A stretch of 64,000 nucleotides of DNA from Macrostomum lignano (taxonomy: Eukaryota). This document shows positions 18,573 through 64,000 of this stretch, piece by piece (positions within the stretch are counted from its first letter, which is position 1; the number at the start of each line of letters is the position of its first letter). The stretch covers positions 30,519 to 94,518 of the forward strand of contig NIVC01002613.1 in NCBI GenBank assembly GCA_002269645.1. The letters are read 5' to 3'. The translations under genes were made by a program, and so were the position numbers. The notes under the pieces are model-generated. The model made no database searches and was not told the origin of the DNA. It worked only from the letters and a program-made list of their open reading frames with translations.

Positions 18573-22004
<3,432 letters not shown>

Positions 22005-43805: not shown

Positions 43806-46525
43806 TCTAATATACTAAAAATGAAATGCTTGGTTGCTTGCTTGTAATTGATTTTCTCCCGAACGGCTCAACCGATTTTCTTCAAACTTGCACCATTCGA
43901 TCAGAAATTTTCCCGGGACGGTACATGCATATTGGCTAAGAAATTGCTCAATGTTAAAGGGATTAAATATTCGAAAAACATGCTTTTTTGCAAAGGTCAA
44001 GCCAAATTTTCGACTTGAAATGCATTGTAAGAATGCTAGAGAAAAAACTGACTGACTGAATTCCGATTGTGATAAAGATTGCATCACAACAAGTTGAAAA
44101 CAGTGCCGAAGAAATGCACACACGACTTGGTTAAAATTGCGTAACCATATTGCTAACTTAAATTGAGACTGATACTGGCTGACTGAGAAATTGATTATGT
44201 CATAACTTTTTACTCCAATTGACTTGCTGTAAGAATTGAATTATAAGGGCCACAATTCATGTTCTCCAATTGAAAAGAGATAGCCCTGATGCGAACAGAC
44301 TGGAATGCTAATGTAGCAACCTGGGTTCGAATCTTAGTAGTACAAAAAGATTTTTTTTATTAAAACACCTTAAAAACACAACAAAACTGCTAAACATCAA
44401 AGAGGCGCAATGTCAAACATAGAAGAGCCAACATATCGAACATAAAAGAGTTACCATATCAAACATAGAAGAGCCACCATGTCGAACATTAAAGAGCCAC
44501 CATGTAGAATATTGAAGAGCCACCATGAAGAACATTAAAGAGCCACCATGTCAAACATTTAGAAGGTTCCATGTCAAAGATTTAAGAGCCACCATGTCAA
44601 ACATTTAAGAGCCACCCTGTCAAACATAAAAGAGCCGCCATGTCAAACATAAAAGAGCCACCATGTCAAACATAAAAGAGCCACCATGTCAAACATAAAA
44701 GAGCCACCATGTCGAACATAAAAGAGCCACCATGTCAAACATAAAAGAGCCACCATTTCGAACATTAAAGAGCCACCATTTCGAACATTAAAGAGCCACC
44801 ATTTTGAACATTTAAGAGCCGCCATGTCAAACAATTAGAAGCCACCATGTCAAACATTAAAGAGCCACCATGTCGAACATTTAAGAGCCACCATTTCGAA
44901 CATTAAAGAGCCACCATATCGAACATTAAAGAGCCACCATGTCAAACATTTAAGAGCCACCATGTCAAACATTAAAGAGCCACTTTGTCGAACATTAAAG
45001 AGCCACCATGTCAAACATAAAAGAGCCACCATGTCGAACATAAAAGAGCCACCATGTCAAACATAAAGAACCACCATGTCAAACATTTAGGAGCCACCAT
45101 GTCAAACATTTATGTGACTTTATGTCAAACATTAAAGAGTTACCATTTCAAACCTTAAAAAGCCACTATGTCGAACATTAAAGAGCCACCATGTCTAACA
45201 TAAAAGAGCTATACCATTAAGAACATTAAAGAGCTATACCATTAAGAACATTAAAGAGCCACCATGTGGAACATAAAAGAGCCACCATGTAGAATATTAA
45301 AGAGCCACCATGTCAAACATTTAAGAGCCACCATTTCGAACATTAAAGAGCCACCATGTCGAACATTAAAGAGCCACCATGTCAAACATTAAAGAGCCAC
45401 CATGTCAAACATTAAAGAGCCACTTTGTCGAACATTAAAGAGCCACCATGTCAAACATAAAAGAGCCACCATGTCGAACATAAAAGAGCCACCATGTCAA
45501 ACATAAAGAACCACCATGTCAAACATTTAGGAGCCACCATGTCAAACATTTATGTGACTTTATGTCAAACATTAAAGAGTTACCATTTCAAACCTTAAAA
45601 AGCCACTATGTCGAACATTAAAGAGCCACCATGTCTAACATAAAAGAGCTATACCATTAAGAACATTAAAGAGCCACCATGTGGAACATAAAAGAGCCAC
45701 CATGTAGAATATTAAAGAGCCACCATGTCAAACATTTAAGAGCCACCATTTCGAACATTAAAGAGCCACCATGTCGAACATTAAAGAGCCACCATGTCAA
45801 ACATTTAATAGCCACCATGTCAAACATTAAAGAGCCACTTTGTCGAACATTAAAGAGCCACCATGTCAAACATAAAAGAGCCACCATGTCGAACATAAAA
45901 GAGCCACCATGTCAAACATAAAGAACCACCATGTCAAACATTTAGGAGCCACCATGTCAAACATATATGTGACTTTATGTCAAACATTAAAGAGTTACCA
46001 TTTCAAACCTTAAAAAGCCACTATGTCGAACATTAAAGAGCCACCATGTCTAACATAAAAGAGCTATACCATGAAGAACATTAAAGAGCCACCATGTGGA
46101 ACATAAAAGAGCCACCATGTAGAATATTAAAGAGCCACCATGTCAAACATTTAAGTGCCACCATGTCGAACATTAAAGAGCCACTATGTCAAACATTTAA
46201 GAGCCACCATGTCAAACATATATGTGACTTTATGTCAAACATTAAAGAGCCACCATGTCGAACATTAAAGAGCCACCATGTAAAACATTAAAGAGCCACA
46301 TTGTTAAACATAAAAGAGCCATTATGTCGTACATTAAAGAGCCACCATGTAAAACATTAAAGAGCCGCCATGTCAAAACATAAAAGTGCCATCATGTCAA
46401 ACCAAAAAGACCCACCATGTCTAACAGAAAAGAGCCACCATGTCAAACATAAATCTGGCATGATGTCAAACATTAAAGTGCCACCATATCGAACATTAAA
46501 GAGCCACCATGTCTAACAGTAAAGA
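43806..46525 (+). mobile_element. Non-autonomous Helitron-like copy A (5' core plus 21-bp satellite; 3' end not seen)
   Basis: Starts A|TCTAATATACTAAAAATG, then a short microsatellite and AACGGCTCAACCGATTTTCTTCAAACTT. The ~600-bp core is shared with copies B-D. Confidence 0.7.
44400..46525. repeat. 21-bp satellite (aaagagccaccatgtcaaacat-type) with higher-order blocks
   Basis: About 100 monomers. A marker variant cactttg recurs at 44981, 45421 and 45836. Confidence 0.95.
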
Positions 46526-46729
46526 GTGTATGTGTGAGATAGATTCCAGAAAAAACGGCTCAACCGATTTTCTTCAAACTTGCACCATTCGATCGGAAAT
46601 TTTCCTGGGACGGTACATGCATCCTGGCTAAGAAATTTCTCAATGTTAAAGGGATTAAATATTCGAAAAACATGCTTTTTTGCAAAGGTCAAGCAGCTCT
46701 TCCTATATACTAAAAATGGTCTGTCTGTG

Positions 46730-46762
<33 letters not shown>

Positions 46763-47344
46763 GTGATCGATTAGAGAAAAAATGGCTGGACCGATTTTGT
46801 TCAAACTTGCACTGTTCGATCAGAAATTTTCCCGTGACTGTACATGCATCGCGGCTAAGAAATTGCTCGATGCTAAAGGCATTAAATATTCGAAAAACAT
46901 GCTTTTTTGCAAAGGTCAAGCAAACTTTTCGACTTGAAATGCATTGTAAGAATGCTAGAGAAAAAACTGACTGGTTGAATTCTGGTTCTGAAATAGATTG
47001 CATCATCACTGAATTGTAACTCCGACTTGAATTGAAAATGCAGTGTGGAAGCGTAGCACCAGACTTGATTTAAATTGCGTAACCATATTGTTAACTGATA
47101 CTGACTGACTGAGAAACTGATTATGTCATAACTGCTTCGTGTGATTTACTCTATGCTTGGATTTTAAACTGTTGAATTATATATATATATAAGTGCAAAA
47201 TTTGATGTTATCAAAAAGATGAGAACTAGCCTAGAGGTGAACAAACTGAACTGCTAAATGCAGCGACGATGGTTCGAATTTTCAAAGAGTATAATTTTTT
47301 TAATTAAAGCTTTTCAACGTCAGGAAAACTAAAAGACTTTTTAA

Positions 47345-49005
47345 AAAGAAGCGTCATGTAAAAATCATAGTAGCGTCATGTAAAAAATCGTAGAAGCGTC
47401 ATATAAAAAATTATAGAAGCGTCATATAAAAATCATAGATGCGTCATTTAAAAAATCATAGAAGCATCATATAAAAATCATAGATGCGTCATTTAAAAAA
47501 CCATAGAAGCATCATGTAAACAATTATAGAAGCGTCATTTAAAAAATCATAGAAGCATCATATAAAAATCATAGATGCGTCATTTAAAAAATCATAGAAG
47601 CATCATGTAAACAATCATAGAAGCGTCATTTAAAAAAATCATAGAAGCGTCATATAAAAATCATAGATGCGTCATTTAAAAAATCATGAAAGCGTCATGT
47701 AAACAATCATAAAAGCGTCATGTGAAAATCAGAGAAGCGTCACGTAAAGAATCATAGAAGCGTCATGTAAACAATCATAGAAGCGTCATGTAAACAATCA
47801 TAGAAGCGTCATGTAAAAAATCATAGAAGCGCCATGTAAACAATTATAGAAGCGTCATGTAAAAAAATCATAGAAGCGTCATGTAAACAATCATAGAAGC
47901 GTCATGTAAACAATCATAGAAGCGTCATGTAAACAATCATAGAAGCGTCATGTAAAAAATCGTAGAAGCGTCATTTAAAAAATCATAGAAGCGTCATGCA
48001 AAAATCATAGATGCGTCATTTAAAAAATCATGGAAGCGTCATGTAAACAATCATAGAAGCGTCATGTAAAAAATCATGGAAGCGTCATATAAAAATCATA
48101 GATGCATCATTTAAAAAAATCATAGAAGCGTCATATAAAAAATCATAGAAGCGTCTTGTAAAAATCATAGAAGCGTCATGTAAACAACCATAGAAGCGTC
48201 ATGTAAAAAATCATAGAAGAGTCATGTAAACAATCATAGAAGCGTCATGTAAGCAATCATAGTAGCGTCATGTAAACAATCATAGAAGCGTCATGTAAAC
48301 AATCATAGAAGCGTCATGTAAGCAATCATAAAAGCATCATGTAAACAATCATAGAAGCGTCATGTAAACAATCACAGAAGCGTCATGAAAAAATCATAGA
48401 AGCGTCATGTAAACAATCATAGAAGCGTCATGTAAACAATCATAGAAGCATCATGTAAAAAAATCATAGTAGCGTCATGTAAACAATCATAGAAGCGTCA
48501 TGTAAAGAATCATAGAAGCGTCATGTAAAAAAATCATAGATGCGTCATTTAAAAAATCATAGAAGCATCATGTAAACAATCATAGAAGCGTCATTTAAAA
48601 AAATCATAGAAGCGTCATATAAAAATCATAGATGCGTCATTTAAAAAATCATAGAAGCGTCATGTGAAAATCATAAAAGCGTCATGTGAAAATCATAAAA
48701 GCGTCACGTAAAGAATCATAGAAGCGTCATGTTAACAATCATAGAAGCGTCATGTAAACAATCATAGAAGCGTCATGTAAACAATCATAGAAGCGTCATG
48801 TAAAAAATCATAGAAGCGTCATGTAAACAATCATAGAAGCGTCATGTAAACAATCATAGAAGCGTCATGTAAAAAATCATAGAAGCGTCATGTAAACAAT
48901 CATAGAAGCGTCATGTAAAAAATCATAGAAGCGTCATGTAAAAAATCATAGAAGCGTCATGTAAAAATCGTAGAAGCGTCATTTAAAAATCATAGAAAAT
49001 CATAA
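47345..49005. repeat. ~22-bp AT-rich satellite (atcatagaagcgtcatgtaaaca) carried by copy C
   Basis: About 75 tandem monomers, different from the A/B/D satellite. Confidence 0.95.
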
Positions 49006-49843
49006 AAATCAAAAATTAAATGCAGCTATAATGCTGTGCTGGGGAGAAAGACTGAGACGTAAAGGCTCTCAGAGAATAACTGCTGAGATTACGGGGGGGG
49101 GGTTTCTGAGATGTCAAAGCAAAAGTCAGAAGCTACTTCAAAGTTCATGTACTTTACTCAATTTTTTTATTGCATTCTTTGTTGGCTCGCCACGGGAGGC
49201 GCTTATAGAAGAAGAGTCATGTAAAAAATAAAAGTAGCACTACGAGCGTATGTACGAGCTATACATAAAATAAAAGTCATGTTCAAGTTAAAAGATTCAT
49301 TTGGGAATTGCTACGATGTCAAAGCTTGGTGGAAATCGTTATAGTGCTGTGATTCTTAAAGAAGGAATCACTAAAATGTCAAGGCTTAGGGGAGAAGAAT
49401 TGCTGAGATTTCAAGGCTTTAGGTTGGGTTAAAGTTAGGTTTAGGTCAGGTGTGGGTTGAGGGTTATATTTTATCGGGTTTCAAGGTTAACAGAATAACA
49501 GGGGATTTTTTAGATTTCAAGGTTTATGGAGGCCATCGCTGACATGTTAAGGCTTACGGGGGAATAGCTGAGATGTCAAGGCTCACGGGGTATAAATGAG
49601 ATTTCAAGGCTAAAGTCAGAAGCTACATGTAGTTTATTGAAAACTTTTTATTACATTATTTGATGCCTCCTCAGGGGAGGGATCGCTGATAAAAAAAGCG
49701 TAATGTAAAAAATAAAAGAAGCTTCATGTCGAAGTTAAGAGATTCATTTGGGAATCCCTACGATGTCGAGGCTTGCAGGAAATCGCTATAATGCTGTAGT
49801 AGTGCTATAGTGACTCTTAGAGAGAATTACTGAAATTTCAATG

Positions 49844-49903
49844 TTAGGTTAGGGTTAGGGTTAGGGTTAGGGCTAGGGTTAGGGTTAGGGTTAGGCTAGG
49901 GTT
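49844..49903 (+). repeat. Interstitial telomere-like (TTAGGG)n
   Basis: About 10 TTAGGG/variant units inside copy C. Confidence 0.85.
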
Positions 49904-50519
49904 AGAAGGTTGACAGATATTTTTAGATTTCCAAGGCTTATTGGGGGCATTGCTGAGATGTCAAGGGGGGAAGTTGATATGTCAAAGCTTGTGGGGGGGG
50001 AATTACTGACATGTCAAGGCTTACAAGGTTTGACAGGAGATTTTTTAAGATTTCAAGGATACATGTAGCTTATTAAAAAAACGTGTATTGCATTTATTTG
50101 GCTCCCCAACGGGGGGCGTAGATTGCTAGTTCGACCTAAAATTCATTGTAAGAATGCTAGAGAAAAAACTGACTGGCTGAATTCCGATTGTGATAAAGAT
50201 TGCATCACAGCAAGTTGAAAACAGTGCCGAAGAAATGCACACACGACTTGAATGAAATTGCGTAACCAATATTGCTAACTCAAATTGAGACTGATACTGG
50301 CTGACTGAGAAATTGATTATGTCATAACTGTTTACTCCAATTGACTTGCTGTAAGAATTGAATTATAAGGGCCACAATTCATGTTCTCCAAATGAAAAGA
50401 GATAGCCCAGATGCGAACAGACTGGGATGCTAAAGTAGCGACCTGGGTTCGAATCTTAGTAGTGCAAAAAGATTTTTTTATCAAAACACCTTAAAAACAC
50501 AAAACTGCTAAACATAATA

Positions 50520-51925
50520 GAAGCGGAATGTCAAACATAGAAGAGCCACCATGTCAAACATAAAAGAGCCACCATGCCAAACATAAAATAAGCACTATGT
50601 CAAACATATACGTGACTCCATGTCAACGATTAAAAAGCCACCATGTCAAACATAGAAGAGCCACTATGTCAAAACTAAACGAGCCACCACGTCTAACATT
50701 TAAGAGCCACCATGTCAAATATTTAAGAGCCACCATGTCAAACATATATGTGACTTTATGTCAAACATTTAAGTGTCACCATATCAAACATCAAATAGCC
50801 ACTTTGTCGAACATTAAAGAGCCACCGTGTCAAACATAAAAGAGCCACCATGTTAAACATAGAAGAGCCACCATGTCAAACATAAAATAGCCACCATGTC
50901 AGACATTAAAAAGCCACCGTATCAAACATAAAAGAGCCACCATGTAGAATATTAAAGAGCCACCATAAAGAACATTAAAGAGCCACCGTGTCAAACATTT
51001 GGGAGCCACCATGTCAGACATTAAAAAGCCACCATGTCGAACATAAAAGAGTTACCATGTAGAACATTAAAGAGCCACCATTTCAAACAGTAAAGAGCCA
51101 CCATGTCAAACATTTAGGAGCCACCATGTCAAACATTTAAGAGCCACCATCTCAAACATATATGTGACTTTATGTCAAACTTTCAAGAGCCACCATTTCG
51201 AACATTAAATAGCCACTTTGTCAAACATTAGAGAGCCGCCATGTCAAACATAAAAGAGTCACCAGGTTAAACATAAAAGAGCCACCAGGTTAAACATTAA
51301 AGAGCCACCATGTCAAACAATAAAGAGCCACCATGTCAAACATAAAAGAGCTACCATGTTAAACATTTAAGAGCTACCATGTCAAACATTTAAGAGCTAC
51401 CATGTCAAACATTAAAGAGCCACTATGTCAAAACATGATAGTGCCATCATGTCAAACCTAAAAGAGCCACCATGTCAAACATAAGGAGCCACCAGGTTAA
51501 ACATTAAAGAGCCACCATGTCAAACAATAAAGAGCCACCATGTAAAACATAAAAGAGCCACCATGTCAGACAATAAAAGCCACCGTGTCAAACATAAAAG
51601 AGCCACCAGGTTAAACATTAAAGAGCCACCATGTCAAACAATAAAGAGCCACCATGTTGAACATAAAAGAGCTACCATGTCAAACATTTAAGAGCTACCA
51701 TGTCAAACATTTAAGAGCTACCATGTCAAACATTAAAGAGCCACTATGTCAAAACATAATAGTGCCATCATGTCAAACCTAAAAGAGCCACCATGTCAAA
51801 CATAAAAGAGCCACCATTTCGAACAGTAAAGAGCCACCATGTCAAGTATAAAAGAGCCACCATGTCAACATAAAAGAGCCACCATGTCAAACATTAAAGA
51901 GCCACCATGCCAAACATAAAAGATA
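50520..51925. repeat. 21-bp satellite in copy B
   Basis: Same monomer family as 44400-46525. Confidence 0.95.
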
Positions 51926-52012
51926 CACAATTTCAAACGTAATAGTAAGCGAATTTTAAAGGAGCCACTATAATGCTAAGGAAATTGTCGCACTAGCTAC
52001 TTATTGTCTGGT

Positions 52013-52212
52013 GGATGCTTGCTATTTGGGGGATGCTATCTATCTGGGGATGCTTGCTATCTGGGGGATGCTTGCTATCTGGGGGATGCTTGCTATCTGG
52101 GGGATGCTTGCTATCTGGGGGATGCTTGCTATCTGGGGGATGCTTGCTATCTGGGGGATGCTTGCTATCTGGGGGATGCTTGCTATCTGGGGGATGCTTG
52201 CTATCTGGGGGT
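52013..52212. repeat. 18-bp repeat (gatgcttgctatctgggg) in the subterminal region of copy B
   Basis: About 11 copies. The same repeat occurs in copy D. Confidence 0.95.
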
Positions 52213-53049
52213 TTTATAAACTAAATAAATAAAATAACTTTTATCAAACACGTTGACATATACAGGGCTCTAAACTAAAAAACTGTAAAAAGTTGATAGT
52301 TTTGTTTTACCTAAAATGCGTTATTAACGATCTCCAAAAATTCCTATTTTAAGCTTAAGCTTAAGAAAAACACTTAAAGTACTCCTGCTAAAAGGTATAT
52401 TATATTAGACGAATATTAATTATTTCTGCTCCTCGAAGGGGGGCAAAACTTTAGCTAGTCCTATATACTAAAAATGAGTTGTCTGTGGGTAGGTAGGTAG
52501 GTATGCGATAGATTTCAGAAAAAATGGCTCAATCGATTTTCTTCAAACTTGCACCATTCGATCAGAAATTTTCCTGGGACGGTACATGCATCTTGGCTAA
52601 GAAATTGCTCAATTTTAAAGGGATTAAATATTCGAAAAACATGCTTTTTTGCAAAGGTCAAGCAGCTCTTTCGACCTGAAATGCATTGTAAGAATGCTAG
52701 AGAAAAAACTGACTGACTGAATTCCAATTGTGATAAAGATTACATCACAACCAGTTGAAAACAGTGCCGAACAAATGCACACAAAACTTGATTTAAATTG
52801 TGTAACAATATTGCTAACTTAAATTGACACTGATACTGGCTGACTGATAAAATTGATTATGTCATAACTTTTTACTCTAACCGATTTGCTATAAAAATTA
52901 AATTATAAGGGCCACAATTCAAGACAAGAGATAGCATAGATGCGAACAGACTGGACTGCTAATGCTACGACCTGGGTTCGAATCTTAGTAGTGCAAAAAG
53001 ATTTTTTTATTCAAAAATCTTAAAAACACAAAATGCTAAACACAAAAAA

Positions 53050-55950
53050 GCACAATGTCAAACATTAAAGAGCCACCATGTCAAACATTAAAGAGCCACC
53101 ATGTCGACCATTAAAGAGCCACCATGTCGACCATTAAAGAGCCACCATGTCGAACATTAAAGAGCTACCATGTCGAACATTAAAGAGCCACCATGTCAAC
53201 CATTAAAGAGCCACCATGTCGAACATTAAAGAGCCACCACGTCCAACATATACATGACTCCATGTTGAACATTCAAGAGCTACCATGTCAAACATATACA
53301 TGACGCCATGTCGAACATAAAAGAGCCACCATGTCGAACATTAAAAAGCCACCATGTCAAACATTAAAGAGCCACCATTTCAACCCTAAAAGAGCCACCA
53401 TGTCGAACATTAAAGAGCCACCATGTCAAACATTAAAGAGCAACCAGGTCAAACATATACATGACTCCATGTCGAACATTGAAGAGCCACCATGTCGAAC
53501 ATTAAAGGGCCACCATGTCAAATATTAAAGGGCCACCATGTCAAATATTAAAGAGCCACCATGTCAAACATTAAAGAGCCACCAGGTCAAACATGAAAGT
53601 GCCACCATGTCTAACATTAAAGAGCCACCATGGCAGACATATACATGACTCTATGTCGAACATTCAAGAGCTACCATGTCAAACATATACATGACTCCAT
53701 GTCAAACATTAAAGAGACACTATGTCAAACATTAAAGAGCCACCAGGTCAAACATGAAAGTGCCACCATGTAACACATTAAAGAGCCACCATGTCGAACA
53801 TTTAAGAACCACCATGTCAAACATAAAATAGCCACCATGTGAAACATATACGTGACTTCATGTAAAACATTAAAGAGCTACCATATCAGACATATACATG
53901 ACTCCATGTCAAACATATACTCGTACGTGACTCCATGTTAGACATTAAAGAGCCACCATGTCGAACATTAAAGAGCCAACATGTTAAAAATACAAGAGCC
54001 ACCATGTCAAACATATACATGACTCCATGTCAAACATTGAAGAGACACCATGTCGAACATAAAAGAGCCACCATGCAAAACATTAAAGAGACACTATGTC
54101 TAACATTAAAGAGCCACCATGTCGAACATTTAAGAGCCACCATGTCAAACATATACATGACTCCATGTTGAACATTCAAGAGCTACCATGTCAAACATAT
54201 GCATGACTCCATGTTGAACATTCAAGAGCTACCATGTCAAACATATACATGACGCCATGTCGAACATAAAAGAGCCACCATGTAAAACATATACGTGACT
54301 CCATGTCAAACATTGAAGAGCCACCATGTCGAACATAAAAGGGCCACCATGTCAAATATTAAAGAGCCACCATGTCAAACATTAAAGAGCCACCAGGTCA
54401 AACATGAAAGTGCCACCATGTAAAACATTAAAGAGCCACCATGTCGAACATTTAAGAACCACCATGTCAAACATAAAATACCCAACATGTGAAACATATA
54501 CGTGACTCCATGTAAAACATTAAAGAGCTACCATATCAGGCATATGCATGACTCCATGTCAAACATATACGTGACTCCATGTTAGACAATTAAGAGCCAC
54601 CATTTCGAAAATTAAAGAGTCAACATGTTAAAAATACAAGAGCATCCATGTCAAACATATACATGACGCCATGTCAAACATTGAAGAGACACCATGTCGA
54701 ACATAAAAGAGCCACCATGCAAAACATAAAAGAGCCACCATGTCTAACATTAAAGAACCACCATGTCAAACATATACATGACTCCATGTCAAACAGTAAA
54801 GAGACACTATGTCAAACATTAAAGAGCCACCATGTCGAACATTTAAGAGCCACCATGTCAAACATATACATGACTCCATGTTGAACATTCAAGAGCTACC
54901 ATGTCAAACATATACATGACGCCATGTCGAACATTAAAGAGCCACCATGTCAAACATTATAGAGCCACTATGTCGAACATTTAAGAGCCACCATGTCAAA
55001 CATATACATGACTCCATGTTGAACATTAAAGAGCCACCATGTCGAACATTTAAGAGCTACCATGTGAAACATATACATGACTCCATGTCGAACATTACAG
55101 AGCCACCATGTCAAAGATAAAAGAGCCACCATGTCAAACATAAAAGAGCCAACATGTCAAATATTAAAGAGCCACCAGGTCAAACATGAAAGTGCCACCA
55201 TGTAAAACATTAAAGAGCCACCATGTCAAACATATACGTAACTCCATGTCAAACATTGAAGAGACCCCATGTCAAACATTAAAGAGCCACCATGTCGAAC
55301 ATAAAAGAGTCACCATGTAAAACATATACGTAACTCCATGTCGAACATTGAAGCGACACCATGTCGAACATAAAAGAGCCACCATGTCAAACATTAAAGA
55401 GCCACCATGTCAAACATATAAGTGACTTTATGTCGAACATTAAAGAGCCACCATGTCTAACATTAAAGGCCACCATGTCCAACATTAAAGAGCCACCATG
55501 TCAAAAAGTAAAGAGCCCCCATGTCTAACATTTAAGAGCCATCATGTCAAACATTAAAGAGCTACTTTGTCTAACATTAAAGAGCCACCATGTCAAACAT
55601 TAAAGAGCCACCATGTCAAACATTAAAGAGCCACCATGTCAAACATAAAAGAGCCAACTTTTTGAACATTAAAGAGCCACCATGTCAAACATAATAGAGC
55701 CACCATGTCAAACATAATAGAGCCACCATGTCAAACATTAAAAAGCCACTTTGTCAAACATAGAAGAGCTCCCATGTCAAACATAGAAGAGCCCCATGTC
55801 AAACATAGAAGAGCCACCATGTCAGACATTGAAAAGCCACCGTATCAAACATAAAAGAGTTACCATGTACGAGCGTAGAACAAAAAAGAGCCACAATGTA
55901 TAACATAAAAGAGCCACAATGTATAACATAAAAGAGCCACCCTGTTAAAC
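53050..55950. repeat. 21-bp satellite in copy D
   Basis: Same monomer family, with an atatacatgactccatg variant. Confidence 0.95.
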
Positions 55951-56047
55951 ATAAAAGATACACAATTTCAAACGTAAAAGTAAGCGAATTTTAAAGGAGC
56001 CGCTATAATGCTAAGGAAATTGTCGCACTAGCTACTTATTGTCTGGT

Positions 56048-56450
56048 GGATGCTTGCTATCTTGGGGATGCTTGCTATCTGGGGGATGCTTGCTATCTGG
56101 GGGATGCTTGCTATCTGGGGGATGCTTGCTATCTGAGGGATGCTTGCTATCTGGGGGATGCTTGCTATCTGGGGGATGCTTGCTATCTGAGGGATGCTTG
56201 CTATCTGGGGGATGCTTGCTCTCTGGGGAATGCTTGCTATCCGGGGGATGCTTGCTATCTGGGGGATGCTTGAAATCTGGGGGATGCTTGCTATCTGAGG
56301 GATGCTTGCTATCTGGGGGATGCTTGCTATCTGGGGGACGCTTGCTATCTGGGGATGCTTGCTATCTTGGGGATGCTTGCTATCTGGGGATGCTTGCTAT
56401 CTTGGGGATGCTTGCTATCTGGGGGATGCTTGCTATCTGGGGGATGCTTG
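56048..56450. repeat. 18-bp repeat (gatgcttgctatctgggg) in copy D
   Basis: About 22 copies. Confidence 0.95.
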
Positions 56451-56710
56451 CGGTCTTGGGATGATTTCTTTTTGCAATGCACTTCATTTGAGCAGTTTGT
56501 CTGTTGTCTTTTTGAAGGATTTTTGGCTGTTTTTTTGTTACTTGTAGAGAACAGAGATTCTATCCAGATGTCCCCCATCGGGGGGCGAAGATTGCTAGTA
56601 GAATCTGAGATCACATCTTCTTGCACTTTAATATTTTTGCTTCAAAATTCGGCTTTCCAAGCCACCGAACGGCTGAAACCTTCAGGCATCACTGTTTCAT
56701 CAGCGACAGC

Positions 56711-56953
56711 ATGGACAAGTCAAACAACGACAATAAGTCCAACCAGTGCAACCCCAACAATGAGCGCTATCAGGGCCACCAGCCCGGCTACCAGGGCACC
56801 GGCACCAAGGCGGATCTGGATAACCATGCCAACCAGCTGAACCCCAACAACTGGCGCTACCAGCAGGGCGGAGGCCCCAGTGGCGGTGGAGGCGGCAGCG
56901 GCAGCGGTGCCGCTGAGCAAGAGCAGCAGAAGTCTTGGTGCACCTTGCAGTGA
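56711..56953 (+). CDS. NPNN-repeat micropeptide 1 (80 aa), C-terminal CaaX (CTLQ)
   Basis: MDKSNNDNKSNQCNPNNERYQGHQPGYQGTGTKADLDNHANQLNPNNWRYQQGGG...KSWCTLQ. It has strong GC3 bias and two paralogues within 4.3 kb. Confidence 0.8.
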   Translation: MDKSNNDNKSNQCNPNNERYQGHQPGYQGTGTKADLDNHANQLNPNNWRYQQGGGPSGGGGGSGSGAAEQEQQKSWCTLQ

Positions 56954-57706
56954 AGTCGGTGACAAAGACTGCCCCAGCCAGCATGCAGAAGATTGCCAAA
57001 AGATTAACAAAGACAGCAGTCTGTGTTGGTTTCACATTTGACTATTTAAAATACAAGATTAGCAAGTTGGATCTTAAAAATTTTTCTCATGTTCAAACTC
57101 GAAGGTCGCTTTGAAAATGCAGCATGAACTCGGCTTCTCCCTGCATGTCTTTTGTGTATTTTTGTTTGTCGAATTTTTTCAACTCAGTTTGGCCTAAGAT
57201 GAAACTCATCCTAAGCACCCCAGTGCGCTCTTGTGCCTCTCCTGAGCAGGCAGCTGCAAGGTACCGTTAGACCGGCGCGGTGCGCGCTTAAACCAATGCG
57301 CTCCTATGATAGCGCGCGATTCGGAGTTGGCGTCCAATCCAAGTCGCGCGAGAATTTCTGTCAGAACTCCAAGGACTACTTAAAAGTATCGATTATTTTT
57401 CAGACAGTAGTCCCCGCCACGCCCTTGCCAGCGCAAGCGCTCTCAGTCCAGTCCTGATTCTAATCTCTGCAATAAACAGACTTGAAGTTCGGGTGGAGCC
57501 AGGGTAAAGTTGTTGCTCAAACTAAATGTACTTTTTGATTGAATTTCCTGGAAATGAGTTCTCAAGTTTCCAAGAAATTTCTGTCAGGCAGGCAGGTATT
57601 TCGAAAGCAAAAACACCGTGTTTTTCTTCTCTCACGTGCTCCGCACCTGGGGTGTACTTTTAAGCCAGAGTTTCTGACTCCTTCCACCGTCACGCACATT
57701 TCAGGC

Positions 57707-57714
57707 TATAAATA
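57707..57714 (+). promoter_or_regulatory. TATA box (TATAAATA) for micropeptide 2; inferred non-coding exon ending at donor gtgagt 57748
   Basis: TATA lies ~40 nt upstream of a canonical donor. An acceptor cccccag is at 58378, 10 nt before the ATG. Confidence 0.5.
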
Positions 57715-57844
57715 GTAAATACAAATCCCGAGGAGCCGCTCAGACCCGTGAGTTTCTTCATCGAGTTCCAAAGCTTCGAGAAGAATTTTTTGCTTTTCTA
57801 AGAATTCTCAGCTTTTGAAAAAAACGGTAAGTTTTTTTACAAGA

Positions 57845-58280
57845 ACGGCACCATTCTCTCTGTGTGGCGCCATTCTCTCTGTGTGGCGCCATTCTCTCTG
57901 TGTGGCGCCATTCTCTGTGTGGCGCCATTCTCTCTGTGTGGCGCCATTCTCTCTGTGTGGCGCCATTCTCTCTGTGTGGCGCCATTCTCTCTGTGTGGCG
58001 CCATTCTCTCTGTGTGGCGCCATTCTCTCTGTGTGGCGCCATTCTCTCTGTGTGGCGCCATTCTCTCTGTGTGGCGCCATTCTCTCTGTGTGGCGCCATT
58101 CTCTCTGTGTGGCGCCATTCTCTCTGTGTGGCGCCATTCTCTCTGTGTGGCGCCATTCTCTCTGTGTGGCGCCATTCTCTCTGTGTGGCGCCATTCTCTC
58201 TGTGGCGCCATTCTCTCTGTGTGGCGCCATTCTCTCTGTGTGGCGCCATTCTTCCTGTATGGCGCCATTCTCTCTGTGGC
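57845..58280. repeat. 19-bp minisatellite (gtggcgccattctctctgt) in the inferred 5'UTR intron of micropeptide 2
   Basis: About 22 tandem copies. Confidence 0.95.
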
Positions 58281-58388
58281 ACAATTTCAGTTCCCTACGA
58301 GTATAGCTCAGACTTGAGCTCTTACTAAAGCCATGGATTGACTTAGGACTGCATCCGCACCTCACCGCGCACCCCCAGAGCAGCGGCC

Positions 58389-58589
58389 ATGGACAAATCC
58401 GGCAGGGACAACAAGTCCAACCAGTGCAACCCCAACAACTCCAGCTACCAGGGCCACCAGAGCGGCTATGGCGGCACCGGGACCAAGGCCGACCTGAGTA
58501 ACCATGGCAACCAGCTGAACCCCAACAACTCGCGCTACCAGGGCGGAGGCGGCGGCCAGGGCCGGTCGGGGGGACATTCGAAGAAATGA
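58389..58589 (+). CDS. NPNN-repeat micropeptide 2 (66 aa)
   Basis: MDKSGRDNKSNQCNPNNSSYQGHQSGYGGTGTKADLSNHGNQLNPNNSRYQGGGGGQGRSGGHSKK. Clear paralogue of peptide 1 with many synonymous differences. Confidence 0.8.
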   Translation: MDKSGRDNKSNQCNPNNSSYQGHQSGYGGTGTKADLSNHGNQLNPNNSRYQGGGGGQGRSGGHSKK

Positions 58590-59449
58590 GCGGTTTTGAG
58601 AGGCGAAAGTCACGGAGCAGAGCTGACAGTTACAGAAATACTGATTGAGCTCTCGTAGAATAACCTGATGCCTCTGTGGCTGTTTACCATCAACTTTGTA
58701 CTTTTGAGGACGCATGATTTGAGCAATAATTACAAAAAATATAATCACAAGATTTTTTTGCGAATCAGCTACTTTTAGTAGTGCAATAATAACACAGCAT
58801 TAAATTGAGCATCTTTTCAGTTTTTGTTAAAATTGAGTTCCACTGCGGACAAGCTTCAAGCCCTGCCACTGTGCCCCGGTGTCACGTCTTAAAAAAATTC
58901 TGCGTTGTTTTATTCAGCTGAATAAAAATACTTTTCAGTATCCAAACTCATTCGGTTATCTTGAATTCTCTCACTGAGCAGAAACTATCTTATGCTTATG
59001 CTTATCTTATCTTATCTTATCTTATCTTAAATATTCCGACAACATTGCAAGTAGACAATAAATTATTACTACAAGGTACATTTCAACAAAAAGACAACAA
59101 CAATCCAGAACTGAATGATTTGTACTCGTACACAAAATTAAATAATGCACATTATAATATTGTAAGACTTGATGTGAAAAATAAATTAACCGCAGATAGC
59201 TAGTCTAGCTTGTCCTTGAGATAAATCCGGCACGTTTTAAAGATACGCAAAGAAATGTTGAGCATATGTTGAATTATCAAACTTCTTTGTCGTTTAAGTC
59301 CTACTTTCTAGATCTTCCATTAATTTTACATTTGCTCTAAATCACAAAGTTTCTAGTGAGTCAAGTGAAACACCTTTTTCAGTCTCTAGTTCACACCAAG
59401 TACTTTAGATGACGCCAATTAGAAAATTTACTCTTAAAATATTAGAAAT

Positions 59450-59980
59450 TCTTGAAATCACCTGCCTGGTGGCCATTGATCGCTGTACACTTCCCTCTCG
59501 AGTCCGTACAGGTTGTTGCTTAGGACGACACGTTCGACCGTGTATACCTTGGTACACCACGGTGTCTTCAGTTCGCCGCGTTTCAGATCGTCACGGACAA
59601 AGTTCCGCAGCAGGACCTTGTCACCGACTCTAAGGCTGAGGCTGCTGGCAGACGCGGACTTCTGAACGTACGAGCGTGCACAAATTTTGTCCTGCCGTCC
59701 CAGTGAAATCGCTCCTGCAGCTTCGATGGGGTGGACTTAATCCCCTGATGAGCTCCTCCAGTCGCAGAGGTGTGATCTTCTTAGATCAGTTGACAGATCT
59801 CTTTGATCTTCCACCTCCAGGCGACGCTCCGTTGACCGATGGCGCTTCTTCTGACATCACAGAACAGCTGCTGGCCCTCGTACCTGAAGTTGCGCTCCGT
59901 TTGTCGAACCTTGCTGTTGAAGTTGTTCTTCTCCTTGGTTGTTGTCAAAGACGCAAGGATGTCGTTCGTATGCGCCACTA
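59450..59980 (-). mobile_element. Ty3/Gypsy integrase relic (H2C2 zinc-binding part and C-terminal GPY/F-like module; core deleted)
   Basis: The minus strand reads KEICQLI*EDHTSATGGAHQGIKSTPSKLQERFHWDG and, in another frame, LRVGDKVLLRNFVRDDLKRGELKTPWYQG. An in-frame stop and a frameshift are present. Confidence 0.65.
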
Positions 59981-60822
59981 AGCAAGTAAAGTTTTAAATC
60001 CGAATACGCGGCAGACAAACTTTATTGTACATTAATTGTAAGTTTAATGTACAATACGTACATATACTGTCTAGATTTAGATGTACCGAAAGTCAGAGAA
60101 CTTTGAAATTTTGTTAACAGACTTGCGGACAAGAATGCGCGGCTATAAAAGATTCGGCAGTATTCATTTAGGTGATATCAGATCACGGCTTAAACTGTGA
60201 TTATTGACAGGTCTTTAATCTCGTAAACCCCAGAGAGAAATCAGCCTAGCGCTTGGCATGACTTCTGGCCCCAAATAAAATAACGCATCCAAAGTTAGGA
60301 TAATGGTTGCCATGACACCGGTCCTCAGCCCTGTCACAATTTGCTCTTGCCTAAACTAAAGTAAATTTGCAACAAGCCGCTGTGGTAAACAGAAGGGTTG
60401 CCTATACCTCATGAATGCAGGTGCAGAGCAGACATTGTGCAATGCAGTAAACAAGGCTGCTCTTGCCAACTCAAATTCAATTGACCGGCTTAACCGAAAT
60501 TGCACGGCACACACCCTCCTGGACTGCAGTAGTAAACAGGCAAGCTGTGTAAACATTTCTAGGAAATAGGCAGATTTCCAAGAAATAAACCGAGAGTCTG
60601 GGTTCATCAGAGTACAAAAGCGCCAATGCTATTGCAGGTTGTTGTTCTCAGATTCTATTTTTAGCAATGACTGAGAGGGCGTATTTAAGAGGCCAAGCCA
60701 GAGCGCCGCTTCCTCCCCGCTGTCACCGACTGCCGCCAGAGCTGAGCTAACGCGAGTCCTCAGAGTGATCAAACGCATTACACACAGACTAGTAAATCCA
60801 GCTACTAATCCAGATTAGCAAC

Positions 60823-61025
60823 ATGTCTGACAAAGCTGCCAGCGACAACAAGTCCAACCAGTGCAACCCCAACAATGAGCGCTACGCGGGCCACCAGCCG
60901 GCTACCAGGGCACCGGCACCAAGGCGGACCTGGATAACCACGCCACCCAGCTGAACCCTAACAACGAGCGCTACCAGGCTCCTGGCGGACAGCAGGAGCC
61001 GCAGCAGCAGCCGCCACCAAAGTGA
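60823..61025 (+). pseudogene. NPNN-repeat micropeptide 3 (67 aa if repaired); 1-bp deletion at 60898-60899
   Basis: MSDKAASDNKSNQCNPNNERYAGHQP/GYQGTGTKADLDNHATQLNPNNERYQAPGGQQEPQQQPPPK. It has cagccggc where copy 1 has cagcccggc. TATTTAA is at 60682. This may be an intact gene with a sequencing error. Confidence 0.7.
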
Positions 61026-61807
61026 AGCTGATCGGATGCCGAGGCATGCACGTTGAAAACTCGGAAACTATTTTAGTGAATCTGAATATTTTATTTAAAA
61101 ACACTGTCTTACTTTAAATGCATTAAGCATGCTATTTTGTGTTTTTAAATATACCCATTATATTTAACCACTGAGGTAAAGATTTCTGTCAGCTTTATCC
61201 AAATAAACTGACAAAAAATCGTACCAATTCCTATTTCCTCTAATGTTTTTTGTGTTTAGTTGCGCCCCAATTGGGCCGTTTTACTTTTTCTGTTGTGGGC
61301 ACGACCTATTCTGAGCGTCAGAGGCCCAGTTTATTACTTTAATCTGCCTTCGCCTTGATTTATCACCTTTCTCTCTCACCGCCGACTTTTACGACCCCCT
61401 GTTTCTAAATTTAGCTTTAAGTGCCAGTCACTTCCGTCTTTGTTATTTGTTTTACTAAGCAATTGGACAATGTCGCCCTCGTCTGTCTATCTATTTATTT
61501 ATCTTATCTGTTTATCTATGTATCTACTCGTATCTATCTATCGAAAAAATATCTAAAAGAGCCAAATATCTTGCTATTATCTAAACGCACAACTACGAGT
61601 ACTTATAGTAGTGACTTTTAGCAAGAAGAAATGATTAGTGCCTTTTAAAAGGGAGATTTAAAAAGCCCTAGTGTAATTAACACGGAACCAACAGTAATTA
61701 AAGCCATGCAAAAACCTCAAGTTGAGACTCATTACCCACTAATTGCTGTTATTAATGAGAGCTGAACAACGTGAGAAAACAAGGAGTGATTTTAAGTAGC
61801 TGAGGCA

Positions 61808-62415
61808 GCGCAGCTCCGTCAAAGGGCAGCGCAGCTCCGTCAAAGGGTAGCAGAGCTCCATCAAAGGTTAGCACAGCTCCATCAAAGGGTAGCAGAGCTC
61901 CATCAAAGGGTAGCAGAGCTCCATCAAAGGGTAGCAGAGCGCTCCATCAAAGGGTAGCACAGCTCCATCAAAGGGTAGCAGAGCTCCATCAAAGGGTAGC
62001 AGAGCTCCATCAAAGGGTAGCAGAGCTCCATCAAAGGTTAGCACAGCTCCATCAAAGGGTAGCAGAGCTCCATCAAAGGGTAGCACAGCTCCATCAAAGG
62101 GTAGCAGAGCTCCATCAAAGGGTAGCACAGCTCCATCAAAGGGTAGCACAGCTCCATCAAAGGGTAGCAGAGCTCCATCAAAGGTAGCAGAGCTCCATCA
62201 AAGGGTAGCACAGCTCCATCAAAGGTAGCACAGCTGCATCAAAGGGTAGCACAGCTCCATCAAAGGGTAGCAGAGCTCGCATCAAAGGGTAGCAGAGCTC
62301 CATCAAAGGGTAGCACAGCTCCATCAAAGGGTAGCACAGCTCCATCAAAGGGTAGCAGAGCTCCATCAAAGGGTAGCACAGCTGCATCAAAGGGTAGCAC
62401 AGCTGCATCAAAGGG
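61808..62415. repeat. 21-bp minisatellite (cagagctccatcaaagggtag)
   Basis: About 28 tandem copies. Confidence 0.95.
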
Positions 62416-63050
62416 TTATGCTACTTACTATAAGTAGTACAGCTAGCAAAATGAACGGAACGCCAACACAGCTGCCTGCGCAGTTGAGTTATCGATGTAT
62501 TAGAAACACAATTAGCGTAACAGTAATTGTAATAATAGGTAATAATTGTTATGCTGTGTATTCGGTGGGCTGCTGAATTTGCAGAACAGATGATGCGGAT
62601 TGTTGGGGGGCTCAGGCAAAGCATTTCAACACCTATTTCGGCAGACAGACACTGGGGGAGGCTGGAGAAAGTGGAAACTGCAGCAAGTGGGAGCCGCCGC
62701 GCACAAGAAATTCACAACAACACGAGAACGAAGAGAAGTAGCGGCTTGGGGAAACGCACAGGTGGCCACAATAAATGGATATAAAAATACGCGGGGCTCC
62801 GAGCCGCCAATTGAATTGCATTCGCTGCTACCGGGGGGAGGGGGACGCGGTGGCCTGAACGCGAAAGAGTTAAAGTTAATAGCAATACAATAGCATCCCG
62901 ACAGTCTGGCCGCATTGTGACAGTGCAGGGACAGACAATAAATAACTGGGTTCACGGAGAGGACTAAAGACACGAGGGGACAACAGAGGCCTGGCAAATG
63001 CACCGCTGCGAACACTGGAGGGGGGGGGTTCCGCATCACGAAGCAGCCGC

Positions 63051-64000
63051 TCAGTCCTCCATGGCGTCCTGAACCTCGTGCGGGTTGAGGATGCGGGCAC
63101 GGTGCACTGCTGGGCCAGCTTGGCCTCCTGGGCCCGCCGGATCTCTCCTCTGCTCCTCCAGGTACAGGTCGCTCAGGTCTCGCGGTGAACTCGCGAATCT
63201 GCACCAGGAAGTCGCGCAGGTGCTCGCGGAATCGCTTCTGGTCGGCGTTGAACGAGAAGCAGCCCTGGACGAACACGGCGATCTGCGGCCGCTGCAGGTG
63301 CGGGTAGGCCTCCGACAGCAGCGCGCTGAGCGACTGCAGCACAAACTCGCTGTTGCTCACGCTGGCCTGCAGCTGCGTGTGCAGCCGGTCCCGCTCGCAC
63401 AGGGAAAACATCAGGCACAGCACCGAGCTCACCTGCGAGCCAGGGGGGAGCTTGATGACTGGGATTTCCTGGGACTGTGGCTGGGATCTCCTGGGATTGT
63501 GGCTGAGATCTCTAGGGATTGTGACTGGGATCTCCTGTGATTGTGGCTGGGATCTCTGGGGATTGTGGCTGGGATCTCCTGGGATTGTGGCTGGGATCTC
63601 TGGGGATTGTGGCTGGGATATCCTGGGATTGTGGCTGGGATCTCATGGGATTGTGGCTGGATCTCCTGGGATTGTGGCTGGATCTCCTGTGATTGTGGCT
63701 GGATCTCTGGGGATCTTCTGGGATTGTCGGAGTGGCCGGGATCTGGCGAGTTTCTGGGAGTGGCTGGCATCTCATGAACACCAGAAGTGAAAAACCTCCG
63801 GCAGCTCACCTGAGACAGCTGGCCGGCCTGCAGCGGGTCGGTGAGCACGGAGAACAGGTGCTGGAGCAGGCTCATGAAGAAGTTGGCGTGGAACTGGCCG
63901 GCAGCGGCCGGGTCGGCAGTCGACCTTCTGCAGCAGGCGGAGCACGATGCTGAGGCCGTCTCGCTGACGGACCTCAAGCTGTGCCGCACGGCCCACAGCA
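63051..64000 (-). CDS. XPO1: Exportin-1 (CRM1), last two exons (64000-63810 partial; 63432-63051), with several 1-bp frameshifts as given
   Basis: DGLSIVLRLLQKV, FHANFFMSLLQHLFSVLTD, LLSEAYPHLQRPQIAVFVQGCFSFN, FREHLRDFLVQIREF, DLSDLYLEE and ILNPHEVQDAMED match the CRM1 C-terminus. Intron gtgagc (63809)...cag (63433). Confidence 0.88.
63455..63722. repeat. 22-bp minisatellite (ggattgtggctgggatctcctg) in the last XPO1 intron
   Basis: About 12 tandem copies. Confidence 0.93.

What the first reader, a model, noticed from the sequence alone, without database searches (positions are those of the whole stretch)
56711..61025. Cluster of three paralogous micro-genes encoding N/Q/G-rich peptides with a duplicated D-N-x-x-N-Q-x-N-P-N-N-x-x-Y motif
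Seen: three same-strand ORFs (56711, 58389, 60823) of 66-80 aa share a ~50-aa core made of two copies of DN[KH][SAG][NT]Q[CL]NPNNx[RS]Y. The copies are 30 aa apart and joined by a conserved HQ[PS]GYxGTGTKADL linker; the N-termini and Gly/Gln tails diverge. The motif residues are conserved while synonymous sites and tails differ, which indicates protein-level selection. There is no signal peptide, and two copies have TATA-like boxes. Inference: this may be an uncharacterised cytosolic, possibly inducible peptide family. The two-pseudo-repeat plus Gly-loop layout recalls amyloid signalling motifs such as the HET-s prion-forming domain, though the Pro in each repeat is atypical; a ligand-binding or adaptor motif is equally possible. 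I recall similar NQLNPNN motifs in short hypothetical proteins from other animals and bacteria, but have not verified this. Such small genes are easily missed by annotation.
Basis: partly seen in the sequence, partly recalled or inferred. Interest (0 to 1): 0.82.

Follow-up and report, generated by a model that had tools for sequence, protein, structure and literature searches.

The report
Three tiny NQxNPNN-repeat protein genes
Three neighbouring genes of the flatworm Macrostomum lignano encode 66-80-residue, largely disordered proteins made of two copies of a 16-residue motif; that motif recurs almost unchanged in thousands of unnamed mini-proteins of bacteria, archaea and invertebrates, so the family is real and uncharacterised, but nothing supports the proposed prion-like reading.

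Summary
Copies 1 (56711-56953, 80 aa) and 2 (58389-58589, 66 aa) are intact. Copy 3 (60823-61025) lacks one C at 60898-60899, so it reads as 43 aa here. It is intact (67 aa, PAA47450.1) on three near-identical sister contigs.

The window is the end of M. lignano contig NIVC01002613.1. All three genes already have RNA-seq-derived "hypothetical protein" models.

The unit (K)ADLDN[HR][AS]NQ[LCM]NPN[NH]xx[YF] defines a family found in all three domains of life:
- 747 representative clusters in a profile search.
- At least 5,735 90%-identity clusters found with a prokaryote-type profile.
- Members in isolate genomes of Flavobacterium, Vibrio and Methanolobus, in Nitrosopumilaceae MAGs, and in rotifers, molluscs, insects, mites, springtails and protists.

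I found no Pfam, NCBIfam, PHROG, PDB or literature match.

AlphaFold gives only a short helix before each NPNN turn and no compact fold. The unit also occurs alone in 31-50-aa proteins and on tails of unrelated membrane proteins.

Best reading: an autonomous binding module, two per protein in animals, for an unknown partner or ligand shared by all three domains. The HET-s/amyloid idea is not supported. The family is novel; the mechanism is inferred.

The parts
56711..56953 (+). Copy 1 CDS, 80 aa. It has two units plus a Gly-rich tail ending KSWCTLQ (CaaX-like).
   Evidence: ORF and translation. GenBank model on the same contig is a 99-aa 5'-partial ORF, 56654-56953. Best homologue E=2e-25.
56729..56770 (+). 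Copy 1 unit 1, DNKSNQCNPNNERY.
56786..56818 (+). Copy 1 linker, GYQGTGTKADL. It is the N-terminal part of the full unit 2.
56819..56860 (+). Copy 1 unit 2, DNHANQLNPNNWRY.
56629..56634 (+). TATA-like element (TAATAT within TTTAATATTTTT). It lies about 20-25 nt upstream of the first codon of the annotated 5'-partial ORF at 56654.
   Evidence: The link to a transcription start is an inference.
58389..58589 (+). Copy 2 CDS, 66 aa. It has two units and a Gly-rich basic tail.
   Evidence: An exact gene model exists on this contig.
58407..58448 (+). Copy 2 unit 1, DNKSNQCNPNNSSY.
58497..58538 (+). Copy 2 unit 2, SNHGNQLNPNNSRY.
60823..61025 (+). Copy 3, frameshifted in this contig. As it stands the ORF is 60823-60954 (43 aa). 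With one extra C it equals the 67-aa protein P0002 / PAA47450.1.
60898..60899 (+). Site of the 1-nt deletion: CC here, CCC in copy 1 and in the intact sister copies.
60844..60885 (+). Copy 3 unit 1, DNKSNQCNPNNERY.
60933..60974 (+). Copy 3 unit 2, DNHATQLNPNNERY, in the shifted frame.
60682..60688 (+). TATA-like element TATTTAA, 141 nt upstream of the copy 3 ATG.
61202..61207 (+). AATAAA poly(A) signal, 177 nt after the copy 3 stop.

Best explanation
These are three transcribed, single-exon paralogous genes of Macrostomum lignano. One is disabled, or mis-assembled, in this contig.

They belong to an unnamed family of very small, very hydrophilic, mostly disordered proteins found in bacteria, archaea and eukaryotes.

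The functional element is a ~16-25-residue unit, (GxGTGTK)ADLDN[HR][AS]NQ[LCM]NPN[NH]xx[YF]. It is predicted to form a short helix capped by the NPNN turn, followed by an aromatic residue.

I propose that each unit is an autonomous binding module that orders itself on contact with a partner. That partner would be present in all three domains of life: a universally conserved macromolecule or a small ligand or ion.

Animal members present two units at a fixed 30/31-residue spacing, so they would be bivalent. The divergent tails would set localisation; for example, the CaaX-like CTLQ end of copy 1 suggests membrane anchoring.

Shown: the genes, their conservation, the family's breadth, the modular and fused occurrence of the unit, and the lack of a predicted fold.

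Inferred: binding as the mode of action, bivalency and prenylation. The identity of the partner is unknown.
For: Genes and transcription:
- The window is the last 64 kb of NIVC01002613.1, and gene models exist for copies 1 and 2.
- The annotation of that assembly was built from RNA-seq transcript assemblies (PMC5730564).
- Copy 3 is intact on L001, L002 and L085.
- GC3 is 0.81-0.88 inside flanks of GC 0.31-0.56.

Conservation:
- Single-sequence search gave 92 hits, including Rotaria, Pinctada, Elysia, Magallana, insects, a mite, a springtail and the dinoflagellate Azadinium.
- Profile searches gave 747 50%-identity representatives, at least 5,735 90%-identity clusters with a prokaryote profile, and 620 with an arthropod profile.
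- 118 confirmed loci were found in bacterial and archaeal genomes, including isolates.
- Positions outside the search pattern are also near-invariant across 442 units: N 99%, D 78%, H/R 95%, A/S 91%, Y/F 84%.

Modularity:
- One unit alone makes up 31-50 aa prokaryotic proteins.
- Proteins carry 1-4 units.
- The unit is appended to a tetraspanin, a PLAC8-like protein (sub-threshold match), MG-/Gly-zipper springtail proteins and single-TM anchors.
- The repeat period is fixed at 30/31 aa in animals and varies from 16 to 46 aa in prokaryotes.

Structure: AlphaFold gave pLDDT 58.7 and 64.1 and pTM 0.21 and 0.28, with only helices at 4-13 and 34-43.
Against: - No partner or ligand has been identified.
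- There is no conserved operon neighbour in 80 prokaryotic loci beyond lineage synteny.
- The structure models are low-confidence, so the helix-turn description is tentative.
- dN/dS among the paralogues (0.22-0.55 over 45 codons) is only weak evidence on its own.
- Low core dS next to unalignable flanks could partly reflect gene conversion or codon bias.
- Expression level, tissue and translation were not seen directly.
- Prokaryotic members are strongly acidic (median net charge -11) while animal members are near neutral, so they need not share one partner.
Confidence: 0.5

Rival explanations
1. Bulk protectant (hydrophilin/LEA-like). The proteins are abundant, disordered, water-holding solutes that protect cells under osmotic, cold or desiccation stress. 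They would act through general physico-chemical properties, not a specific partner.
For: - Composition meets the two hydrophilin criteria (my knowledge: Garay-Arroyo et al. 2000). Gly is 9-23% and GRAVY is -1.7 to -1.8.
- No fold is predicted.
- Codon bias is strong, which suggests high expression.
- Members occur in bdelloid rotifers and many environmental microbes.
Against: - About 13 consecutive near-invariant positions shared from archaea to insects is far stricter than bulk-solvent functions require.
- The unit is also attached to tails of specific membrane proteins.
- No stress-expression data were found.
Confidence: 0.2
2. Ion or small-ligand chelating loop. The D/N/H/Q-rich unit (with Cys in the first animal unit) coordinates a metal ion or similar ligand, and the proteins buffer or deliver it.
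For: - The invariant residues are mostly oxygen or nitrogen donors (D, N, H, Q, plus C in unit 1).
- Prokaryotic members carry long acidic tails.
- A ligand present in all cells would explain the three-domain conservation without a conserved gene neighbour.
Against: - The unit does not fit the EF-hand loop pattern: there is no Gly at position 6 and no acidic position 12 (sequence inspection; pattern from my knowledge).
- The flatworm first units replace His with Lys.
- There is no PDB or Pfam relative to support a metal site.
Confidence: 0.15
3. Substrate or regulator of a nucleotidyltransferase. The invariant Tyr after NPNN would be modified (for example adenylylated or uridylylated), or the unit would regulate a pol-beta-type NTase.
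For: - Two protist-like proteins carry 4 units followed by a region with a GSx10DxD signature. One of them has a weak MTPAP-like palm hit, E=0.011.
- In two Firmicutes loci (L013, L026) an ORF with the same signature ends at or overlaps the start of the small gene.
Against: - Only 2 of 80 prokaryotic loci show this adjacency. In the third locus with the ORF (L071) it lies 3 kb away.
- The NTase assignment is sub-threshold, and the bacterial and eukaryotic NTase-like parts are not detectably related.
- No such gene lies near the flatworm cluster.
Confidence: 0.07
4. HET-s-like amyloid signalling motif. Two pseudo-repeats would stack into a beta-solenoid that templates a partner.
For: Two ~14-residue pseudo-repeats are separated by a Gly-rich linker, and the composition is N/Q/G-rich.
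Against: - No HET-s family hit at E<=10.
- Helices, not strands, are predicted.
- Pro is invariant inside the unit.
- There are no hydrophobic runs.
- No NLR or HeLo partner lies nearby.
- Single-unit proteins are common.
Confidence: 0.03
5. Non-functional or spurious ORFs, or contamination.
For: Copy 3 is frameshifted in this contig. The proteins are very short and of low complexity.
Against: - The cluster is present on four M. lignano contigs next to CRM1.
- Gene models are transcript-based.
- Homologues have E-values down to 1e-25 in many phyla.
- The sister contigs are 99.5-99.8% identical and differ mostly by indels, so the copy 3 lesion may be an assembly error.
Confidence: 0.03

Closest known systems
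Hydrophilins / small repeat stress proteins (my knowledge: LEA proteins, bacterial KGG-repeat proteins YciG/GsiB, fungal Con-6)
   Same: Very small, Gly-rich, strongly hydrophilic and predicted to be disordered. Built from 1-4 copies of a short motif. Found in several domains of life.
   Different: - No sequence relationship to any of them, and no Pfam hit at E<=10.
- The motif is far more strictly conserved.
- No stress-induction data exist.
HET-s prion-forming domain and other amyloid signalling motifs
   Same: Two short pseudo-repeats joined by a Gly-containing linker. N/Q/G-rich.
   Different: - Predicted helical, not beta.
- Invariant Pro inside the unit.
- No hydrophobic alternation.
- No NLR or effector partner.
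- Occurs as a single unit and in archaea and animals.
Short linear motifs / molecular recognition features in disordered proteins
   Same: A compact, autonomous, position-specifically conserved peptide. It occurs in otherwise disordered context, in variable copy number, and on tails of unrelated proteins.
   Different: - Eukaryotic linear motifs are usually 3-10 residues, evolve quickly and are lineage-restricted. This unit is 16+ residues and nearly invariant across three domains.
- No binding partner is known.
CaaX-box prenylated proteins (copy 1 only)
   Same: Cys at position -4 (CTLQ). It is kept as CTVQ in the homeologue L085. A distant member, P0070, ends in CQIL.
   Different: - Only 1 of 336 other family members examined has it.
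- The a1 residue is Thr or Gln rather than aliphatic.
- Prenylation has not been tested.

Membership tests
Unnamed NQxNPNN mini-protein family (defined here) | One or more units DLDN[HR][AS]NQ[LCM]NPN[NH]xx[YF] in a protein that is mostly under 120 aa | tested here: met
   Six units in three genes. Consensus taken from 442 units.
Unnamed NQxNPNN mini-protein family (defined here) | Significant sequence or profile similarity to members from other phyla | tested here: met
   E values of 2e-25 to 1e-10 to rotifer, mollusc and arthropod proteins. 747 representatives in the profile search.
HET-s-type amyloid signalling motif | Match to the HET-s prion-forming domain family | tested here: not met
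   No Pfam hit of any kind at E<=10 for the three proteins.
HET-s-type amyloid signalling motif | Beta-strand-forming pseudo-repeats with alternating hydrophobic residues | tested here: not met
   AlphaFold models show only short helices. No run of 3 or more hydrophobic residues. Invariant Pro.
HET-s-type amyloid signalling motif | Genomic or domain pairing with an NLR or pore-forming effector that carries the matching motif | tested here: not met
   The neighbours are the paralogues, minisatellites and CRM1.
HET-s-type amyloid signalling motif | Forms self-templating fibrils | not testable with these tools
   Needs ThT, EM and seeding assays.
Hydrophilins | Gly content above 6% and high hydrophilicity | tested here: met
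   Gly 17.5, 22.7 and 9.0%. GRAVY -1.69, -1.77 and -1.83.
Hydrophilins | Accumulation under water deficit, and a protective effect | not testable with these tools
   No expression data were found. Supplement look-ups for Mlig011114 returned nothing.
CaaX prenylation substrates (copy 1) | Cys at the fourth position from the C-terminus, conserved in orthologues | tested here: met
   CTLQ in the window, L001 and L002. CTVQ in L085.
CaaX prenylation substrates (copy 1) | Aliphatic a1 and a2 residues, and demonstrated lipid modification | tested here: inconclusive
   a1 is Thr and a2 is Leu or Val. Modification is not testable here.
Semialdehyde dehydrogenase dimerisation domain (PF22698) | Score at or above the Pfam gathering threshold | tested here: not met
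   26.0-26.2 bits against a cut-off of 27, over ~30 residues, in two homologues only. None for the window proteins. Judged spurious.

The most novel reading that the evidence does not exclude
The 16-residue DLDNHxNQxNPNNxxY unit is a previously undescribed peptide module found in all three domains of life. It would dock onto, or chelate, one component common to bacteria, archaea and eukaryotes. The mini-proteins that carry it would then form a new class of regulators or carriers of that component, with animal members acting as bivalent and sometimes lipid-anchored versions.
Probability: 0.3. Interest if true: 0.8.

Novelty: new variant of a known kind. Interest (0 to 1): 0.6.

Why it matters
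- A peptide unit this short that stays almost letter-for-letter the same from ammonia-oxidising archaea and Flavobacteria to flatworms, oysters and ants is rare. It points to a very old, very specific interaction.
- The family has at least several thousand members. I found no name, domain model, structure or paper for it.
- Defining it would annotate thousands of "hypothetical" micro-proteins at once.
- It would also give an entry point to whatever conserved partner or ligand it recognises.
- M. lignano offers RNAi and transgenesis, and many bacterial hosts are culturable, so the question can be tested directly.

Tried and rejected
**Database searches with no useful hit**
- Pfam, NCBIfam and PHROGs on flatworm and prokaryotic members gave nothing above threshold.
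- The PF22698 hits are sub-threshold and local.
- PDB sequence and profile searches gave nothing for A2. For A3 there was only an insignificant 17-residue match, E=0.16.
- Rfam found nothing over 55500-62500.

**Literature with no hit**
- Eleven motif strings and the gene id Mlig011114 returned no papers.
- 'NPNN' plus 'small protein' returned one irrelevant paper.
- Supplements of three M. lignano papers held no entry for Mlig011114.

**Prokaryotic gene neighbourhoods**
- All-against-all clustering of ORFs in 80 loci gave only lineage-level synteny.
- The convergent ~400-aa neighbours on Pseudomonas and Cereibacter plasmids and in the Accumulibacter and Methylibium loci are not homologous.

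**Nucleotidyltransferase lead**
- Support is limited to two adjacent Firmicutes loci and two eukaryotic fusions, and those two sets are not detectably related to each other. I kept it only as a minor rival.
- The source name 'DNA polymerase beta' on springtail protein P0338 has no domain support.

**Mobile elements and other fusions**
- Phage and plasmid collections hold only rare 'hypothetical protein' hits.
- Ten more long representatives had no Pfam domains.

**Not run**
- Fold search was skipped because both models are low-confidence.


Full report
**Where the window comes from.** Copy 2's protein is encoded exactly once in the public collection, on Macrostomum lignano contig NIVC01002613.1 (assembly GCA_002269645.1, Mlig_3_7). 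The fetched locus is base-for-base identical to window 52389-64000 and ends where the window ends. The window is therefore the last 64 kb of that contig. The rest of the window holds ordinary animal genes: a PIGO/PIGG-like gene, an RRM+SPOC protein, a protein kinase and the CRM1 C-terminus. These are interspersed with many minisatellites. This is a genuine flatworm chromosomal context, not contamination.

**The observation.**
- Copy 1 (56711-56953, 80 aa) and copy 2 (58389-58589, 66 aa) are intact ORFs.
- Each contains DNKSNQCNPNNxxY, then HQxGYxGTGTKADL, then [DS]NH[AG]NQLNPNNxRY. The two units are exactly 30 residues apart.
- Copy 3 (60823-61025) has the same layout but lacks one C at 60898-60899 (CAG CC GGC instead of CAG CCC GGC). 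The sequence as given encodes only 43 aa, and the second unit lies in another frame.
- With the missing base, copy 3 is identical to PAA47450.1/PAA52096.1 (BOX15_Mlig011114g3/g4). That protein is encoded intact on contigs NIVC01003302.1 and NIVC01004449.1. A version with two substitutions (g1) is on NIVC01000020.1.
- The first two contigs are 99.5-99.8% identical to the window and differ mostly by indels.
- Copy 2's tail also differs between contigs by a G6/G5 homopolymer. The published description of this assembly reports 180 Mb of duplicated blocks at least 95% identical (PMC5730564).
- The copy 3 frameshift is therefore either an assembly indel or a lesion in one of several redundant copies. 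It does not show that the gene is dead.
- The back-translated motif occurs 5 times in the window against 0 in 100 shuffles. DNA similarity among copies is confined to the coding core.

**Are they genes?**
- The Mlig_3_7 annotation was built from RNA-seq transcript assemblies, with ORFs called by TransDecoder (PMC5730564).
- It contains models for all three genes on the sister contigs and for copies 1 and 2 on this contig.
- The copy 1 model is a 5'-partial ORF starting at 56654. That is about 20-25 nt downstream of a TTTAATATTTTT element, consistent with a TATA-driven start. This link is an inference.
- The coding regions are sharp GC3 islands (0.81-0.88) in AT-rich flanks.
- dN/dS among the paralogues is 0.22-0.55 over 45 codons. 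This is suggestive only.
- The strong evidence for selection is conservation across phyla.

**The family.**
- A single-sequence search with copy 1 found 92 proteins at 50-88% identity over the core. Named sources include Rotaria, Pinctada, Elysia, Magallana, bees, a cricket, a midge, a mite, a springtail and the dinoflagellate Azadinium.
- A profile of 28 members found 747 50%-identity representatives among 1.84 billion.
- An arthropod-type profile found 620 90%-identity clusters. These include ants, termites, wasps, bugs, Tetranychus and a cryptophyte.
- A scan of one genome per prokaryotic species confirmed 118 loci. They include isolates (Flavobacterium chuncheonense, F. profundi, Epilithonimonas, Luteirhabdus, Vibrio, Holdemanella, Bilifractor, Anaerobiospirillum, Methanolobus vulcani) and many Nitrosopumilaceae MAGs.
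- The prokaryotic proteins are 31-75 aa with one or two units, for example MGKYSGTGDKADLDNHSNQLNPNNEEYAGDGEDDE. They often have an acidic WxSRGxDERPDDWE tail.
- A profile of 13 prokaryotic members retrieved at least 5,735 clusters. Every source name among the 120 listed was 'hypothetical protein'.
- Across 442 units the consensus is (K)ADLDN[HR][AS]NQ[LCM]NPN[NH]xx[YF]. Positions not used to find the units are 78-99% conserved.
- Animal-type members keep a 30/31-residue period and are near neutral. Prokaryote-type members have 16-46-residue spacing and a median net charge of -11.

**Is it known?** I found no evidence that it is.
- There was no Pfam, NCBIfam or PHROG family.
- There was no relative among solved structures.
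- Eleven motif strings and the gene id returned no papers in the 8.3-million-paper library.
- Three M. lignano data supplements held no entry for the gene.
- Phage and plasmid records hold only a few copies labelled 'hypothetical'.

**Anatomy and mechanism.**
- AlphaFold with 28 and then 114 aligned sequences gives mean pLDDT 58.7 and 64.1 and pTM 0.21 and 0.28.
- The deeper run predicts one short helix per unit, immediately before the [CL]NPNN turn (residues 4-13 and 34-43), and nothing else.
- The proteins are extremely hydrophilic and Gly-rich, with no hydrophobic runs.
- The unit behaves as an autonomous module. It stands alone in 31-50-aa proteins and occurs in 1-4 copies.
- It is also appended to unrelated proteins that are mostly membrane-tethered:
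  - a tetraspanin (PF00335, above threshold);
  - a PLAC8-like protein (sub-threshold);
  - springtail proteins starting MGN(T/S) with a glycine-zipper region;
  - several single-TM anchors.
- Copy 1 itself ends in CTLQ, a CaaX-like box. The homeologue keeps it as CTVQ, and one distant member ends in CQIL.
- No conserved operon partner exists in 80 prokaryotic loci.

From these points I infer a fold-on-binding recognition or chelating module whose target is present in all three domains. I put about 0.5 on that general mechanism and I do not know the target.

Rival readings:
- A bulk protectant role is the main rival. The strictness of the motif argues against it.
- A metal or ligand-binding loop is a special case that I cannot separate computationally.
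- A link to nucleotidyltransferases rests on two fusions and two adjacent loci, and is weak.

The HET-s comparison fails every feature I could test. There is no family match, the prediction is helix rather than strand, Pro is invariant, there is no hydrophobic alternation, and there is no NLR or effector partner. Its recollection of the motif in other animals and bacteria is fully verified.

**Verdict.**
- The feature is real, with one copy mis-described.
- The genes are already annotated as hypothetical proteins, so they were not missed.
- The family they belong to appears undescribed, despite thousands of members across all three domains.
- I class it as a new variant of a known kind (small hydrophilic repeat proteins), with interest 0.6.
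- I give about a 0.3 chance that it is a new universal peptide module, which would deserve about 0.8.

Noticed in passing
window 56939-56953 (copy 1 C-terminus); L085 3274-3516; L084 1379-1630: Copy 1 ends in KSWCTLQ, a CaaX-like prenylation box. The ~93-97%-identical homeologue keeps it as CTVQ. One distant member from an AT-rich, arthropod-like contig ends in QSWCQIL. No other of the 336 family members fetched by then has Cys at position -4.
   Followed up: partly
window 58565-58589 versus L001/L002 3568-3777: Copy 2's tail reads GGHSKK* here and GDIRRNERF* on two 99.5-99.8%-identical contigs. The cause is a G6/G5 homopolymer difference. Most differences between these contigs are indels, which suggests long-read assembly errors or very recent haplotype differences.
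   Followed up: partly
window 44392-55980, 52007-52211, 56042-56451, 57847-58278, 61807-62416, 63459-63711: The small genes are separated by minisatellite arrays with periods of 18, 19, 21 and 22 bp. They lie downstream of ~11 kb of 23-bp satellite blocks with strong AT skew. The same 18-bp unit, TCTGGGGGATGCTTGCTA, occurs at two places 4 kb apart. These arrays create long spurious ORFs on both strands.
   Followed up: partly
P0140, P0337-P0341 (springtail proteins; not in the window): The two-unit module forms the C-terminus of ~300-aa proteins. These start with MGN(T/S), a myristoylation-like signal, and contain a glycine-zipper region. One of them is named 'DNA polymerase beta' by its source, without any supporting domain.
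   Followed up: partly
L013 392-1269, L026 3297-4114; P0202, P0194: An ORF with a GSx10DxD nucleotidyltransferase-like signature ends at or overlaps the start of the mini-gene in two Firmicutes loci. Two protist-like proteins fuse four units to a region with the same signature.
   Followed up: partly
window 56697-56710, 58375-58388, 60810-60822: Each ATG is preceded within 4-12 nt by a pyrimidine-rich stretch ending in AG (…TTTCATCAG…, …CCCCCAGAGCAG…, …CCAGATTAG…). These could be trans-splice acceptor sites, which are common in this species, or just a shared start context.
   Followed up: no
window 4266-7888 (+), 10820-12214 (+), 20183-21508 (-), 62629-63432 (-): Other genes in the window: a PIGO/PIGG-like phosphodiesterase-family gene, an RRM+SPOC protein, a protein kinase, and the C-terminal exon of CRM1/exportin-1. 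CRM1 also flanks the cluster on all sister contigs.
   Followed up: partly
L085 ~5600-5760: In the more divergent homeologue, only the second unit of copy 2 was found in frame and no gene was called there. Copy 2 may be frameshifted or mis-assembled on that contig.
   Followed up: no
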